NCBI GenBank assembly: GCA_004431415.1
Contig: QPMI01000212.1
Coordinates: 62,001-126,000, forward strand
Length of the DNA: 64,000 nucleotides
Direction: 5' to 3'
Source: Cyanophora paradoxa CCMP329
Lineage: Eukaryota > Plantae > Glaucophyta
Shown here: positions 15,446 to 21,163 of the stretch, one piece after another
Position numbering within the stretch: position 1 is the first letter of the stretch
Layout: every line of letters starts with the position of its first letter
Translations under genes and position numbers: made by a program
Notes under the pieces: model-generated
Told to the model about the DNA's origin: nothing
The model's input: the letters and a program-made list of their open reading frames with translations, nothing else
Databases searched by the model: none

Positions 15446-16005
15446 TTAGTACATCTGGCCCGAGGTCGCAGTCCTGCAGCAGGGTTAGCGAATTCCACAA
15501 GGAGAACGACAGAAGAAAGCTTTGCCTGATGATCTGGAGGAGCGCTGCGGCACGAAGCGGTCAGAACAAGGAGAGCCGCCGGATGGCTCTCAACGTCGGC
15601 CCGCACGGGTGGCTGAGGGGGCTTGCGCACCCGAGCCAACGACGACGAAGATGAAGAAACCGAGAACCATGGGGCCGACAGAGACCGAGCTCTTCTTTTG
15701 CTGCTTGAACACGCGCATGGGTAAGCTCCACGGGCGAAATGCGGCGGGAAGGCGCGCGCGGCCGTAGCGCTGCCGAGCTCGCAACTTCCTAGAGAATCTC
15801 TATAGACATCGCAAGCGGCCGGGGGGGCGGACCTTGCCAGTGGTGACAGCCCCGCGCTTGGTCACGTTGTTGTTGTAGTTCTCCGACTTGCTGCGAATCT
15901 TCCGGGACTGCTGCTTGACCAGAAGATAGATTCTGTTAGCCCAGGAGCGAGCGCGCGATGGAGCGCGGGAGGCAATTCTACGGTGAGCGCGCAGGGCCGC
16001 ACCAT
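15446..16005 (-). CDS. RAMP4: RAMP4/SERP1 ER translocon-associated protein (5 exons; first coding exon is the ATG only)
   Basis: Spliced product M-QSRKIRSKSENYNNNVTKRGAVTTGK-QKKSSVSVGPMVLGFFIFVVVGS-ALLQIIR-TATSGQMY* matches the RAMP4 family pattern. Confidence 0.92.
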
Positions 16006-16144
16006 TGTGTTAGCTGTAGAAGAAGGGTGAGCAGAACGACTCCGAGAGGTGACTGCGTGCCTCTGCTGCTTGCTCCGCGGTTTGCGGCTTTCGAACGGGG
16101 TACAGTGAGAGCCGGGCGGGTAGAGCCTTCCTTCGTTCAGCAGC

Positions 16145-19100
16145 ATGTCGGCCTTCTCGGCCGGTCTCGTGCCGGCCCTCGGCACGGCGGAGGGGAGTGG
16201 CGGGATCGGCGTACTCGCGGGACGAGCGCTGCGCATCGCCGGCGACGGGCGGCGGGCATTGAATCGACGCCGGCGGCGCCCGGTGTTCGCGGTGGATCCG
16301 GCTGCCCCGCCGGTGGTAGTAGTAGGCATGGCGAGGCGGAGAGGCAGCGATCCGTCCGCGTCGGCCCCCGCAGACGCGGCTGGCGGGGTCGAGGCGGCCG
16401 GCACGAGCGGCTCCCCGGACAACGGCGGCAGGCTCCCTGGTGGTGCGGACGCGGGGAAGATCGACAAGATGCTGCGGCAGTCCCGTGCGCGTATGGAGCG
16501 CCGCGGAGGCGCTCGCGCGCGTGCGATATCCGAGGCGCTGGAGAGCTTCGGCGCGCGGTCGGCGGCCCGCGACCTGGCGACCCCGCGACCGGAGACGCCG
16601 CGGAGAGGCCGGCCGCGGAAGTACTCGAAGCAGCCGAGCGCGGCGGGAAAGGCCGCGGCCGCGAGGAGCGGAGCGCAGGGCCCGGCGAGGAGAGACCGCG
16701 GCCGGCCGCAGGCTCCTCCAGGCGACGACGACCAAGGCCCGAGCAGCGGGGAGGAGGAGGGGGCGGCGGCGGCGGCCGCACGGACGGCCGCGAAGCAGCA
16801 GCAGCGGCCGACGTCGCCGCCCGCGGACGGCCGCGAGGAGTGGCGCCCGTCGTCGCCGCCCCTCCCGTACGCCATGGAGCGGCTCGAGTTCGACCCGCGG
16901 TACCGCCCCCTGACGCCGGTCCCCGGCGGCGGCGGCGGCGGCGACGGGTCGGACGCGATCGGGCCCCTGGAGATGTTCCGCAAGCTGAAGTCGCCGGCGC
17001 CGCCCGGGGCCGAGGGCCCCGGGGGCGGCCCCGGCGGCGGCCCGCCGCAGCCGAGCCTCGTGCCTGTGCCGCTGGAGGAGTTCAACCCGTTCAAGGTCCT
17101 CCCCGCCCAAAAAGTCCTAGGCGACCTCGTCTCCTACATCGAGCAGCGCTCCTGGAAGGTCCAGGGGCCCCCTTCCCCGGTCCGCCCCTTTGATTCTGTG
17201 CGCCCGGTGGTTCTGCCTTGGACGCGCGTGCGTGCTTCAGGGTCCGCCCACGTCGGACGACGAGGAGGAGGACGAGGAGAGGGGAAGGGCGCGGGGGCCC
17301 GGGGCCCGGTGGGGGGCCCTGCCCTCGGGGGACCCGGCCGGCAGCTTCGACGCGGCGGAGGTGCTGGAGGACGAGCCGCCCGAGGAGGCGTTCCACAGGG
17401 CCCTTGAGGAGCGCCGCCGGGGCCGGGGCGGCGGCGGCGGCGCCCCGCCCCAGCAGCCGGCTTTGACTTCGACCCCGGGCCCGGCCCCGGCCCCTACGCC
17501 GGCGCCGGCGCAGGAGTCTGCATCGTCGTCGTCTTCGGCGGCGGCGGCGGAGGCGGAGGCGGCGGCGGCAGCGGCGGCGGCGGCGGCGGAGGCCGGCGCG
17601 TCGCTGCGGATCGGGGAGCGGAGCGTGGCGGAGATCGCGGAGGACGTGACGCGGGCCGCGGCGGCCGCGGCGGAGGCGGCGGAGGAGCGGGCCGCAGGCG
17701 GGCCGCCAAAGCAGCAGCAGCAGGGGGAGGACGAGGGCGTCCTGGTGGACGGCGCCCCGGGGGGCAAGCCCAAGGCAGGCCGGGCCCCGCCGCCCTCCCT
17801 AAGCTTCGCCCCTAGCGCCCCCTCAGCTTCCCCCCCGCCGCCCGCCCGCAGCTGCCTCGGTACGACGAGATGCTGGGGTGGACGCTCCGCGTCTCGGAGG
17901 CGGCGACGATGCTCCGGACCTCGGAGCCTACCGTCGTGCGCTACATCAAGGAGGGCCGCCTCTCGGGCTTCCCGGTACCCCTCCCCGCGGCCGCTATCGT
18001 ACCCCTCGGGCTGACGCCGCGCAGTCGTGGGTGCCGTCGAAGGGCACCAGCGGCGGCCGCGCGCAGGACTGGCGCAAGCAGTGGTGTGTACCCCCCGCGG
18101 GGCGCTCCCCCCCCCGCCCCCCCCCCCCCCCCCCCCCCCCCCCCTTCCCAGGTGGGTCTGGGAGCGTGACGTCATCGAGCTTGCGGGGAAGGCCCGCACC
18201 GATCTCGTGTCCCTCGAGGAGCTCACGAAGATCCTCGTACCCTCCCCCGCTCCTTCCCCCCCCCTCCCCTCCGAGCCCCGCCGCAGGGGGTACCCGGGCG
18301 GACCGAGGCGGTGAAGCGCTTCGTGAAGCAGTCTTCCTCCTTCCGAGGCATCATTATCAAGGCGCGCCGTACCCCCTCTCCTGGTCCAGTACCCCCCTGA
18401 AGGTCTTCCGCCAGTTCGGGGAGGAAGGGTCCGCGGAGGTGGGCCGGGGTACGTACTACGTCGCCCGCTCCGAGGTCGAGGCATACCAGCGGGTGCGCCT
18501 ACCCCCAGAGAAATCCCTCTCTACCCCCCTCTCCCTCCCTCTACCCCCTTCTACCCCCTCTGCCCCCGTCCCCCCCCCCCTTCCCCTCTCCCTAAACGAC
18601 TCCGCAGGACCTTCAGGCCTTCCTCGAGCTGAACGTCCCCGCCGTCGAGGCCGCCGCCATGTACCCCCCCCCCGCTTCTCCCCTCCCACCCCACCCCCGG
18701 GCTCACGCGCAGGGTGGGGCAGGTGGGGCGTGAGCACGCTGCTGGTGCAGCACTGGCTCCGCCTGGGCAAGATTACCGGAACGAAGCGGGAGGGCCTACC
18801 CCCCCACCGCGGCTGGTACGTCGCCCGCGCCGAGGCGGAGCGGATGCGCGAGCAGCTCGACCGGCAGCGCTCCATGGTGCGCCCCGCCCCGCCCCGCCCC
18901 GCCCCGCCCTCCGCTTAGATGGCCGCGGGGCGACGACGAAAGGTGTCGGTGAGGCAGCTGGCGGAGGTGCTCTGCGTCTCCCCCGAGACGGTCCGCTGGT
19001 GGCTCTCCACCGGCCAGCTGGACGGCATCAAGGCGCCCCCGCTCCGCTCCGCTCTTACGTTGTTTCCTCATCTGAGCCTGAACCTGGGCAGATCGACAAG

Positions 19101-20041
19101 CTGCCGGTGATGACCCGCCGCCGCCCCACGTGGGCCGACGAGCGGCCGCGGCGCCGCGCCGGCTCGAGCTCGCCCCCGCCCTCCCCGCCGCCCTCGGACG
19201 GCGACGGCTCCGACGGGGCGGAGGCCGCGCCCAACAGGAAGCGCGCCCCTCTTCCCGGCCCGGCCCGGCCCCCTACGCCTGAGAGGGCGGGCGGGCGTAG
19301 GGTTTGGGTGCCGCTAGAGGACATCTGCGGGGCGCTGTGGGACCCGACCTCTACCCCCCTCGCGGCCTCCAAGCTCTACCGAACGGGCGAGATGGAGGCC
19401 CGCGGCCGCGCCCGGCCCCGCTCCCCCGCCGACAACGACGCCCGCCGCAAGCAGTCCCGCGCCCTTTTTCACCAGAGTCCGCCCCGCCCACCCGCCCCGC
19501 CCATCTCCGCTTTGCTGCGCGCTCACCCTGCGGCCTGGCAGTGTACGTGGTGATCAACAAGAAGGGGGAGATCCGCGTGACGGGCGCCGACTCGCGAGGT
19601 TCGGATTCGAACCTGTTCTTGCTTTTCGAGCTCGGGGTGACGGCTTCCCTTCGGACGTTCGAACGAGCAGGCCGGCGGGAGTGGCTGGTGGCCGAGAAAG
19701 ACGCCCTGGACCTCGCGCGGCGGCGGCGGGCGCGCCTGCCCCCCGCGCAGCAGGCCGACGAGCCCCCGCTCCTGCCCCGCGACGAGGCCCTGCGCTCCAT
19801 GGACGAGGGCCGGCTCGTCCCGGAGGCCGAGGCTGCCTCGCGCCTCGGGGGCACCCGCGCCGCCGTGCGCGAGGCGCTGCGGGCGGGGCGCCTGCCCGGC
19901 GCCCGCTACTTTGCGGAGCGCCAGGAGGGCGTCCGCTGGCTCGTGGAGGCCGAGGGCCTGCCCCCGCCCCGCCGCAGGGGCCGGCCCCGCTCCGCCCCGC
20001 CCCCGTCCCCGCCCCCGTCCCCGCCTCCGGAGTACCAGTAG
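16145..20041 (+). CDS. Putative plastid-targeted DNA-binding protein with tandem excisionase/MerR-like HTH (HTH_17-like) units and two AT-hooks
   Basis: MSAFSAGL start; RRGRPRK and RRGRPRS; units LRVSEAATMLRTSEPTVVRYIKEGRL, AVEAAAMWGVSTLLVQHWLRLGKI, VSVRQLAEVLCVSPETVRWWLSTGQL, EAEAASRLGGTRAAVREALRAGRL, each followed by a W/Y-x-V wing. Confidence 0.8.
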
Positions 20042-21163
20042 CCGCCCCGCCTGCCTGCCTCCACACAGCTAGCGCCCCGCCCCGCCCCGCCTTTCTCCCC
20101 TTTATTTCATGCTGAATTTAATGCTCATACATGCAAATACTAACTTTACGCCAACGATCAAGCGATCACGAAACTTGAGATTGCGCATGCCTGCGTGCCT
20201 ATAACTACAGCTGCCTGCGCGGCGCATGCAGCTGACTGCGCATGCCGACGCCGTGACGGAGTCTAGATCTGGATTCGATGATCTAGATCTGAGACTTGCC
20301 GCCGCTCAGCCTGGCAGCGGCTAGCGCTGGCGGCCCGGCGGCCCGGCGGCATTCCTGCAGTGCACGTGATTGTAATCATGACTCACGAGTCATGACTCTT
20401 TAATGAAAGAGTCTAGATCTAGCTAGAATGAGATGATTGAGCTCAGCGGCTCAAGAGCAAGCTCTAGAGAGATCCAAATAGATAAAGCAACCGTTGAACG
20501 ACTGGCGAATCATTGAATCAGTGCACAGGCCTCGAGGCAGCACAGGCCTTGAGGCAGCACAGGCAACAAAGCAAAGGGCACCCGGATATTCGAGCCCCCC
20601 TGCGGGGCCGCCGCCGGGGCGCAGGATCGCATTATCCGGGTCCTGCGGGGCCCGGGGCCGCCGCAGCCTGGCAGGACCCTGCTATAGCTATGTCCACAGT
20701 GTTGCTATTTCTTCAAACTCGTATTGTGCATCCATCTCTGAATTTACAAAAAGCGATATCGATGCAAAGCTGCAGTGTAGAGCTGCAGCACTGGGCCTCC
20801 ACGGCCAGCAGAGCTTACAAAAATTTACATAAGCTAGTGCTTTGGAAGACTAAAACGCTTAGAAAATCAAGAGAGCGTGGCAATCTTACATAGGAGTATA
20901 CATGTGGCAAGGCACGTAGACGCATGTACGTGAAAAAGCATTCAGATGTAAGGGGCCGTATGTTCTGCTAGGAAATTTAAAGCGCTGGAGGGCCAACGGC
21001 GAGTGAGCCAGCGAGCCAAGGCCACCGGCAGACCGGAGCAGCGCATGCCGGCACGCCGGGGGCCCAGAGAACGAGCTCGTCATTGGCAGCGCCCGGGCCG
21101 GGGAGGGGAGGGGGGGGGGGGGGGGGGGGTATTGGAAGGGAACGGGCCGGGGTGGTCGGGTCG

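What the first reader, a model, noticed from the sequence alone, without database searches (positions are those of the whole stretch)
16145..20041. Tandem array of phage-excisionase-type HTH domains plus AT-hooks behind a plastid-type transit peptide: candidate undescribed plastid nucleoid or gene regulator
Seen: manual splicing gives four clear and one or two degenerate repeats of [LV]xVxEAAxxLGVSxxTVxxWxxxGxL followed by a W/Y-x-V wing, bracketed by RGRP AT-hooks near 16605 and 19975. The N-terminus MSAF resembles those of the plastid-protein genes in this window (MAFV, MQAAF, MSACF, MEPAF). Known: this winged HTH (HTH_17/Xis/BldC-like) is typical of bacteria and phages, where single domains oligomerise head-to-tail on direct repeats; AT-hooks bind AT-rich minor grooves. 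Inference: a prokaryote-derived domain was concatenated, acquired introns and was targeted to the plastid to bend, package or regulate the AT-rich plastid genome. I recognise no named eukaryotic family with this architecture.
Basis: partly seen in the sequence, partly recalled or inferred. Interest (0 to 1): 0.88.

Follow-up and report, generated by a model that had tools for sequence, protein, structure and literature searches.

The report
Six-fold excisionase-type HTH protein, Cyanophora
This is a real, expressed 14-exon nuclear gene of the alga Cyanophora paradoxa whose 1012-residue product strings six bacterial or phage excisionase-type DNA-binding domains between AT-hooks, with no eukaryotic relative found; its start looks like a plastid import signal, so it is a plausible but unproven plastid DNA-organising protein.

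Summary
Spliced transcript contigs from three studies give one 14-exon CDS, 16145-20041 (+), 1012 aa. From Met62 on it is identical to the unnamed public model Cyanophora paradoxa tig00000900_g5372.t1. A profile built only from bacterial repeat units finds four clear HTH_17/excisionase winged-helix repeats (24.5-41.7 bits). Two further repeats are degenerate: only their wing halves score. Pfam HTH_17 (55.5 bits, cut-off 27) and NCBIfam 'excise' (43.5, cut-off 28.8) are passed. AlphaFold models give the beta-alpha-alpha-beta-beta(-alpha) fold; the nearest solved folds are Pukovnik Xis, BldC, P2 Cox and two-domain TraN. Three RGRP cores occur (0.17 expected, P=0.00045).

Covalent arrays of 4-7 such repeats already exist in bacterial and phage proteins, so concatenation after transfer is not needed. 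No eukaryotic homologue and no full-length homologue turned up.

The public model omits 61 N-terminal residues (MSAFSAGLVP...). Transcripts include this stretch, it starts at the only upstream ATG, and it resembles verified cyanelle transit peptides. Import is untested, and the protein is absent from one published cyanelle proteome.

Best reading: an architectural DNA binder acting as a pre-linked Xis/BldC-like filament, in the plastid (0.45) or the nucleus (0.35). The scan holds no other note of this kind.

The parts
16145..20041 (+). Whole CDS, 14 exons, 3039 nt, 1012 codons plus stop. Exons: 16145-17179, 17241-17774, 17852-17974, 18025-18083, 18152-18236, 18287-18361, 18415-18492, 18608-18660, 18723-18876, 18943-19032, 19092-19240, 19301-19476, 19542-19598, 19671-20041.
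   Evidence: Spliced contigs of X1, X2 and X10 against genomic X8; splice ends; phases; exon peptides colinear with public protein P0001.
16145..16327 (+). 61 codons missing from the public model. They encode a cyanelle-transit-peptide-like N-terminus (MSAFSAGLVP..., Phe4, Pro10, net charge +6, Ala/Gly/Arg/Val-rich).
   Evidence: X2 contig starts at 16127 and X1 contig at 16147. The only ATG in 15990-16150 is at 16145, with A at -3. Comparison with verified transit peptides in PMC4510345. GC3 of 79% is weaker than in later exons.
16328..17774 (+). Low-complexity, probably disordered half (Ala/Gly/Pro/Ser 48-56%) with basic, neutral and acidic blocks. Interrupted by intron 1 (17180-17240).
   Evidence: No Pfam or NCBIfam family; no Atlas neighbour; composition.
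16598..16624 (+). AT-hook 1, PRRGRPRKY (residues 152-160).
   Evidence: Sequence; RGRP enrichment test.
16688..16711 (+). Weaker GRP core, RRDRGRPQ (residues 182-189).
17885..18194 (+). Repeat R1 (residues 535-598), spanning exons 3-5, with a wing insertion of about 15 aa.
   Evidence: Pfam HTH_17 30.4 bits on exon 3; bacterial profile 31.6 bits; AlphaFold2 pLDDT 93-96 in the HTH.
18201..18492 (+). Repeat R2 (degenerate), exons 5-7.
   Evidence: The bacterial profile detects only the wing half (11.2 bits) and the HTH half is not significant. The AlphaFold2 model has HTH helices at pLDDT about 90 and a poorly defined wing loop.
18629..18876 (+). Repeat R3, exons 8-9.
   Evidence: Bacterial profile 41.7 bits. 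Not found by Pfam HTH_17.
18943..19136 (+). Repeat R4, exons 10-11. The HTH is clear; the wing is diverged.
   Evidence: Pfam HTH_17 21.4 bits on exon 10 and 35.2 bits on a segment; bacterial profile 27.3 bits; weak match to Pukovnik Xis 4J2N by sequence.
19302..19735 (+). Repeat R5 (degenerate), exons 12-14, with an insertion of about 35 aa.
   Evidence: Only the wing half scores with the bacterial profile (7.4 bits). AlphaFold2 gives pLDDT 63-76 in the HTH, below 50 in the insertion and 68-82 in the strand plus helix.
19811..19960 (+). Repeat R6, the only complete domain within one exon (exon 14).
   Evidence: Pfam HTH_17 16-17.6 bits; bacterial profile 24.5 bits; AlphaFold2 pLDDT 89-97; fold matches P2 Cox, Xis and BldC at rmsd 2.7 A.
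19970..19993 (+). AT-hook 3, RRRGRPRS (residues 990-997), followed by a PPPSPPPSPPP tail and the stop at 20039-20041.
   Evidence: sequence.
17180..19670 (+). Thirteen short introns (50-115 nt, C-rich). Nine are GT-AG (17180-17240, 17975-18024, 18084-18151, 18237-18286, 18493-18607, 18661-18722, 18877-18942, 19477-19541, 19599-19670) and four are GC-AG (17775-17851, 18362-18414, 19033-19091, 19241-19300).

Best explanation
Shown: a single, expressed nuclear gene of Cyanophora paradoxa encodes a 1012-aa protein. In order it has a 61-aa N-terminal extension, about 460 aa of low-complexity sequence carrying AT-hooks, six covalently linked MerR/excisionase-class (HTH_17) winged-helix domains (four intact, two degenerate), and a C-terminal AT-hook.

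Inferred mechanism: the array behaves like a pre-assembled version of the head-to-tail filaments that single-domain Xis, RDF and BldC proteins form on direct repeats. Successive recognition helices would enter successive major grooves. The wings and the RGRP hooks would sit in AT-rich minor grooves. One molecule could then coat and bend some tens of base pairs, acting as an architectural or nucleoid-associated DNA binder, or as a regulator.

Inferred location: the N-terminal MSAFSAGLVP... extension is a cyanelle transit peptide, so the target would be the AT-rich cyanelle (plastid) genome.

Inferred origin: the domain array came from a bacterium, phage or mobile element, probably already as an array, and has since gained 13 introns and host base composition.
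For: Gene and expression.

Domain identity: Pfam HTH_17 55.5 bits, TIGR01764 43.5 bits, independent bacterial profile, PHROG excisionase families.

Fold. Nearest solved folds are Pukovnik Xis 4J2N, BldC 6AMA/6AMK, P2 Cox 4LHF and the two-domain TraN 4P0Z.

Precedent for the mode of action: BldC forms head-to-tail multimers on direct repeats and distorts DNA (PMC5859096). TraN is a covalent pair of winged helices that binds adjacent major grooves with its wings in the minor groove (PMC6158623).

AT-hook enrichment.

Transit peptide: the mRNA covers 16127/16147 onward in two studies. The ATG at 16145 is the only upstream ATG and has A at -3. Phe4, Pro10, positive charge and 61 aa match verified cyanelle transit peptides, which are 61-90 aa and mostly carry Phe in the first 10 residues; MSAF, MAAF and MAFV strings recur in that cyanelle proteome table, though they were matched anywhere in the sequences.

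Augustus models of this genome lack UTR prediction and are said to need curation (PMC6704402).

Origin: every other top hit looks bacterial or phage-like. P0002 sits beside a holin and a CHAP endolysin and P0004 beside a transposase, AAA_30 and ParA.
Against: - No localisation data exist.
- The protein is absent from the cyanelle proteome tables of PMC4510345. That set holds only about 260 proteins, so the absence is weak evidence.
- The public model starts at Met62, which has a strong Kozak-like context (G at -3 and +4).
- GC3 of the first 61 codons is 79%, not the highest of the three codon positions there, against 84-100% in later exons.
- Phe near the N-terminus also occurs in 13 of 53 proteins not assigned to the cyanelle that have processed N-termini.
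- AT-hooks and Arg clusters are typical of nuclear proteins.
- DNA binding itself is inferred from homology and fold only, and two of the six repeats are degenerate.
- The relative orientation of domains in the models is uncertain (pTM 0.55-0.56).
Confidence: 0.45

Rival explanations
1. The same DNA-binding protein works in the nucleus, either only there or as a second isoform started at Met62. It would be a lineage-specific chromatin or transcription factor of bacterial or phage origin that binds the AT-richer islands (promoters, foreign or organelle-derived DNA) of a nuclear genome with about 68-75% GC.
For: The public model starts at Met62, which has G at -3 and +4. The protein has three RGRP cores and several Arg clusters that resemble nuclear localisation signals and a long disordered acidic/basic region like many nuclear factors. 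It is not in the cyanelle proteome tables. GC3 periodicity in the first 61 codons is weak.
Against: Transcripts include the upstream in-frame ATG, which is the first AUG and has A at -3. The peptide it adds closely resembles verified cyanelle transit peptides. No eukaryotic nuclear family has HTH_17 arrays.
Confidence: 0.35
2. The protein is imported into mitochondria, whose genome is also AT-rich (from general knowledge), and acts on mitochondrial DNA.
For: The Arg-rich stretch GRALRIAGDGRRALNRRRRRP (residues 26-46) could serve as a presequence.
Against: An N-terminal Phe within a hydrophobic MxAF start is the hallmark of cyanelle precursors, not of mitochondrial ones (PMC4510345). Nothing else points to mitochondria.
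Confidence: 0.05
3. The array no longer binds DNA specifically. It would be a decaying or repurposed horizontally acquired gene, for example a protein- or RNA-binding scaffold, or have no selected function.
For: Two repeats are degenerate and R4 has lost a recognisable wing. It is a singleton with no orthologue found, so no conservation evidence exists.
Against: A 3039-nt frame stays open across 14 exons and is spliced correctly in three studies. GC3 is 84-100% in the array exons. Four repeats keep the full bacterial consensus, including the recognition-helix motif, and fold confidently.
Confidence: 0.1

Closest known systems
Uncharacterised bacterial and phage proteins with tandem HTH_17 arrays (P0002 with 7 repeats, P0003 with 5, P0004/P0154 with 5-6, and P0005, P0007, P0009)
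   Same: Covalent head-to-tail arrays of the same domain with a 55-66 aa period and the same consensus (..EAA..LGVS..TV.R.I..G.L.....G..W.I...D...). They are the best hits after the protein itself in 1.84 billion cluster representatives.
   Different: They are prokaryotic and intron-less, sit in phage or mobile-element contexts and look bacterial in composition. Scores are only 139 bits or less against 293 for the protein itself, and no colinear homologue exists. Their functions are untested.
BldC (Streptomyces), the founding member of the small MerR-like/Xis-like regulators
   Same: Same fold: Foldseek probability up to 1.0, target-normalised TM 0.57-0.75. BldC oligomerises head-to-tail on direct repeats and distorts DNA (PMC5859096), which is the arrangement a covalent array would fix in place.
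   Different: BldC is a 68-aa single domain. NCBIfam HTH_BldC scores 17.6 bits against a cut-off of 77, so this protein is not a member.
Phage and ICE excisionases / recombination directionality factors (Pukovnik Xis 4J2N, P2 Cox 4LHF; TIGR01764 'excise'; PHROG 2907 and 66)
   Same: Domain family: TIGR01764 43.5 bits against a cut-off of 28.8, PHROG excisionase families, fold, and the best, though weak, PDB sequence hit 4J2N.
   Different: RDFs are small single-domain proteins that work with an integrase on att sites. Here there are six domains in a 1012-aa eukaryotic protein, and no recombinase context was looked for or is implied.
TraN of plasmid pIP501 (4P0Z, 4PM3)
   Same: A solved example of two covalently linked winged helices of this class in one chain, binding adjacent major grooves (PMC6158623). 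It is the top Foldseek hit for the R1-R2 model (probability 0.98).
   Different: It has only two domains, packed as an internal dimer. The match is loose (TM 0.34-0.40, rmsd about 13 A), so the inter-domain geometry is not shown to be the same.
AT-hook proteins (HMGA type) and known plastid nucleoid proteins (HU-like protein, PEND, SWIB, Whirly)
   Same: RGRP cores flanked by basic residues. The nuclear-encoded HU of Cyanophora carries an MAF-type transit peptide and is found in the cyanelle proteome, which shows the route proposed here exists.
   Different: None of these contains HTH_17 domains. No sequence relation to any of them was found.

Membership tests
Pfam HTH_17 (PF12728) | Whole-protein score at or above the gathering cut-off of 27 bits | tested here: met
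   55.5 bits with 3 stretches on P0001; 30.4 bits on exon 3 alone.
NCBIfam TIGR01764 'excisionase family DNA-binding protein' (domain model) | Score at or above the cut-off of 28.8 bits | tested here: met
   43.5 bits on P0001. Single repeats alone fall below the cut-off (24.6, 15.8 and 14.5 bits).
Functional excisionase / recombination directionality factor | A small single-domain protein that acts with a site-specific recombinase of a mobile element | tested here: not met
   The protein has 1012 aa and six domains and is an intron-rich nuclear gene. Recombinase partnership was not tested.
BldC family (NF033787) | Score at or above the cut-off of 77 bits; a single domain of about 68 aa | tested here: not met
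   17.6 bits.
Classical MerR regulators (PF00376 / PF13411) | MerR HTH above the cut-off, plus a coiled-coil dimerisation helix and an effector domain | tested here: not met
   MerR 18.4 bits against 28.2, and MerR_1 11.4-19.5 bits against 21.6. No coiled-coil or effector domain was detected.
Winged helix-turn-helix fold of Xis/BldC type | Strand, helix-turn-helix, beta-hairpin wing, optional C-terminal helix | tested here: met
   DSSP elements of the models for R1, R2 (wing loop poorly defined), R5 (moderate confidence) and R6. Matches to 4J2N, 6AMA/6AMK and 4LHF have target TM 0.5-0.75, though Foldseek E-values are above 0.001. R3 and R4 were not modelled.
AT-hook | An R-G-R-P core flanked by basic residues | tested here: met
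   PRRGRPRKY and RRRGRPRS are canonical and RDRGRPQ is weaker. Three cores against 0.17 expected, P=0.00045. Minor-groove binding was not tested.
Cyanelle (glaucophyte) transit peptide | Phe within the first 10 residues of a hydrophobic N-terminus, Pro at positions 10-20, Ala/Ser-rich and positively charged, about 60-90 aa, cleaved on import | tested here: inconclusive
   Phe4, Pro10, net charge +6, 11 Ala but only 3 Ser, 61 aa up to Met62, compared with PMC4510345. Import and cleavage cannot be tested here, and the protein is not in that proteome.
Plastid nucleoid-associated protein | Physical presence in plastid nucleoids and binding to plastid DNA | not testable with these tools
   No localisation or binding data; inference only.

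The most novel reading that the evidence does not exclude
Cyanophora imports into its cyanelle a lineage-specific nucleoid protein built from a phage or mobile-element excisionase-type array. It would be a covalent 'Xis filament' with AT-hooks that packages or regulates the AT-rich plastid genome, possibly with a second, nuclear isoform started at Met62. This would be a kind of plastid DNA-organising protein unrelated to HU, PEND, SWIB or Whirly.
Probability: 0.4. Interest if true: 0.75.

Novelty: new variant of a known kind. Interest (0 to 1): 0.55.

Why it matters
A transcribed, intron-rich gene that joins a plastid-type presequence to six prokaryotic winged-helix domains and AT-hooks gives a concrete candidate that can be tested. 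It is also, in these searches, the only eukaryotic example of a tandem HTH_17 array. These arrays are widespread in bacteria and phages but remain uncharacterised, so working out this protein's DNA-binding mode would inform both fields. On the practical side, the public gene model appears to lack its first 61 codons, and those codons are what change the predicted location.

Tried and rejected
1. Homologue search with the mechanical read-through ORF 17878-18915, which holds exons 4, 7 and 9 in frame. Junk poly-Pro words swamped it and nothing was found.
2. The same search restricted to the exon 9 part gave no protein of 190-605 aa. Neither blank says anything about longer relatives.
3. Pfam and NCBIfam calls on window:19672-20038 used the wrong frame for exon 14. 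They were repeated in frame at 19673-20038.
4. The four-repeat alignment A3 covered only R3-R4 and was not used for folding.
With P0001:606-735 it found no relative in 185,579 bacterial and archaeal species genomes.
6. The whole-length search of P0001 found only P0001 itself.
7. The Atlas search of the N-terminal half gave no usable hit. The Atlas search of the array gave only bacterial HTH_17 clusters, all scoring below 0.9.
8. Searches of the cyanelle proteome tables for short strings of this protein gave none.
9. Intron positions were examined as evidence for duplication inside the eukaryote. Only introns 3 and 10 share a column and phase, and sister repeats are not each other's closest relatives, so this was rejected as unsupported.
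Exons were searched by reference, and full-length work used the public protein P0001 that a search returned. Only a local counting script put the 61 N-terminal residues in front of P0001.
Full report
**What is there.** The window is very GC-rich, 64-84% in 2-kb bins. The region 16145-20041 reads as short coding blocks in changing frames, separated by C-rich spacers. I laid public runs on 15900-20300. Contigs of X1, X2 and X10, from three studies, skip ten intervals. Contigs of X8 are colinear with the genome, so X8 is DNA and the other three carry spliced mRNA. After allowing for alignment ambiguity, each skipped interval has GT-AG or GC-AG ends. Three further introns lie where the tool masks repeats or lists no joint: 18084-18151, 18877-18942 and 19599-19670. 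They follow from the lengths of the contig pieces.

The result is 14 exons, 3039 nt and 1012 codons, with every phase consistent. The contigs break only in the GCG-repeat stretch 17459-17601 inside exon 2. There the two X2 contigs overlap by arithmetic and the frame stays open.

**Public model.** A profile of exon-encoded repeat pieces (alignment A2) was run against 1.84 billion cluster representatives. It returned P0001 (951 aa, 293 bits). This protein is EukProt EP00741_Cyanophora_paradoxa_P005542, tig00000900_g5372.t1, an unnamed singleton cluster. Every exon translation occurs in P0001 in order, with single-residue gaps exactly at the five split codons. My model and the public one therefore agree from Met62 on. 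P0001 served as the reference for all full-length work.

**The repeats.**
- Exon 3 alone passes Pfam HTH_17 (30.4 bits, cut-off 27). Exon 10 scores 21.4 bits and exon 14 scores 16.1 bits.
- P0001 scores 55.5 bits on HTH_17 with three stretches. It scores 43.5 bits on NCBIfam TIGR01764 'excise' against a cut-off of 28.8. PHROG excisionase families match too.
- To avoid circularity I built an HMM from 121 repeat units of the bacterial hits only. It scores R1 31.6, R3 41.7, R4 27.3 and R6 24.5 bits.
- With that HMM, R2 and R5 show only their wing halves (11.2 and 7.4 bits). Their HTH halves are not significant.
- The AlphaFold2 model of R1-R2, using bacterial two-repeat rows as the alignment, has mean pLDDT 83.8. 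The R5-R6 model has 75.6, with R6 at 89-97 and R5 at 63-82. All four domains show strand, helix-turn-helix, hairpin and a trailing helix in most.
- Foldseek ranks two-domain TraN (4P0Z) first for R1-R2. At single-domain level it finds Pukovnik Xis (4J2N), BldC (6AMA/6AMK) and P2 Cox (4LHF), with target-normalised TM 0.5-0.75. E-values stay above 0.001, as expected for 50-residue domains.

**AT-hooks and the N-terminal half.** RGRP occurs three times against 0.17 expected (P=0.00045). Two of the cores are canonical: PRRGRPRKY at nt 16598-16624 and RRRGRPRS at nt 19970-19993. Residues 62-523 are low-complexity and match no family.

**The N-terminus.** The public model starts at Met62. Transcript contigs reach 16127 (X2) and 16147 (X1). 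ATG 16145 is the only ATG between 15990 and 16150, is in frame and has A at -3. The added 61 residues begin MSAFSAGLVP, are hydrophobic and then Arg-rich, with net charge +6.

Koehler et al. (PMC4510345) list verified cyanelle transit peptides such as MAAFVAGAQA, MAAFACGVPV and MAFVAPIVAV, 61-90 aa long. Most carry Phe within the first ten residues and Pro at positions 10-20. MSAF, MAAF and MAFV strings recur in their proteome table, although they were matched anywhere in the sequences.

Several points count against a transit peptide:
- GC3 of these codons is only 79%.
- Phe near the N-terminus also occurs in 13 of 53 processed proteins not assigned to the cyanelle.
- The protein is not in the proteome tables.
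- Met62 has a good initiation context.

Price et al. (PMC6704402) state that their Augustus models lack UTRs and need curation, so a mis-called start is plausible.

**Relatives and origin.** After P0001 the best hits score 139 bits or less and look bacterial or phage-like. Many carry 4-7 tandem repeats of the same period. P0002 lies next to a holin and a CHAP endolysin. P0004 lies next to a transposase, an AAA_30 protein and ParA.

Nothing closer turned up:
- No full-length homologue was found among 5.8 billion proteins.
- No close relative was found in 185,579 prokaryotic species genomes.
- The Atlas returned only bacterial clusters.

Each Cyanophora repeat scores higher against bacterial units (50-86) than against its sisters (24-49), although that compared 219 bacterial units with only 5 sister repeats. 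Only introns 3 and 10 share a position and phase. Acquisition of an already tandem array, followed by intron gain and compositional adaptation, is therefore the simplest history. The donor cannot be named from 50-residue domains.

**How it probably works.** BldC and the Xis-type factors bind direct repeats as head-to-tail multimers and bend DNA (PMC5859096). TraN shows that two covalently linked domains of this class can occupy adjacent major grooves with their wings in the minor groove (PMC6158623). Six linked domains plus AT-hooks would act as a pre-formed filament on AT-rich DNA. This step is inference, because no binding was tested.

| Reading | Probability |
|---|---|
| Plastid (cyanelle) | 0.45 |
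| Nuclear, or dual through Met62 | 0.35 |
| Mitochondrial | 0.05 |
| Non-DNA-binding or decaying | 0.10 |

**Verdict.** The gene is already in the public annotation, but it is unnamed and appears to be truncated at its 5' end. It is a new variant of a known kind: a prokaryotic tandem HTH_17 array placed in a eukaryotic, possibly plastid-targeted, AT-hook protein.

Noticed in passing
window 16145-16327: The public model tig00000900_g5372.t1 (P0001) starts at Met62. Transcript contigs and the only upstream ATG support a start 61 codons earlier, which adds a transit-peptide-like N-terminus.
   Followed up: yes
window 17775, 18362, 19033, 19241 (intron 5' ends): Four of the 13 introns are GC-AG rather than GT-AG, a high share for one gene. 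All four are seen as joints in spliced contigs of two or three studies.
   Followed up: partly
window 17180-19670 (introns), e.g. 18090-18150: The introns are strongly C-rich on the coding strand (C 436, G 203, T 143, A 76) and include a run of about 40 C. Many begin GTACCC.
   Followed up: no
window 16147-17247: One X1 contig is colinear with the genome across intron 1 (17180-17240), while the X2 contig splices it out. The retained form would stop at 17405 after 420 aa, without any HTH repeat. It may be pre-mRNA or DNA carry-over.
   Followed up: no
window 17974/17975 and 19032/19033: Introns 3 and 10 sit at the same column of the domain alignment (just after G-x-L-x-G-x-x) and both are phase 0, in repeats R1 and R4. 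No other intron pair matches.
   Followed up: partly
window 15800-16046, minus strand: A divergently oriented, apparently well-covered neighbouring gene ends or starts about 100 nt upstream of this gene's first ATG, so the two probably share a very short promoter region. Its identity was not established.
   Followed up: no
L002:502-2673 and L001:6001-7197: Bacterial tandem HTH_17 arrays sit in mobile contexts. The 7-repeat protein P0002 lies just upstream of a sigma-70 region-4 protein, a holin and a CHAP endolysin. P0004 lies near a transposase, TadE, AAA_30 and ParA-like genes.
   Followed up: partly
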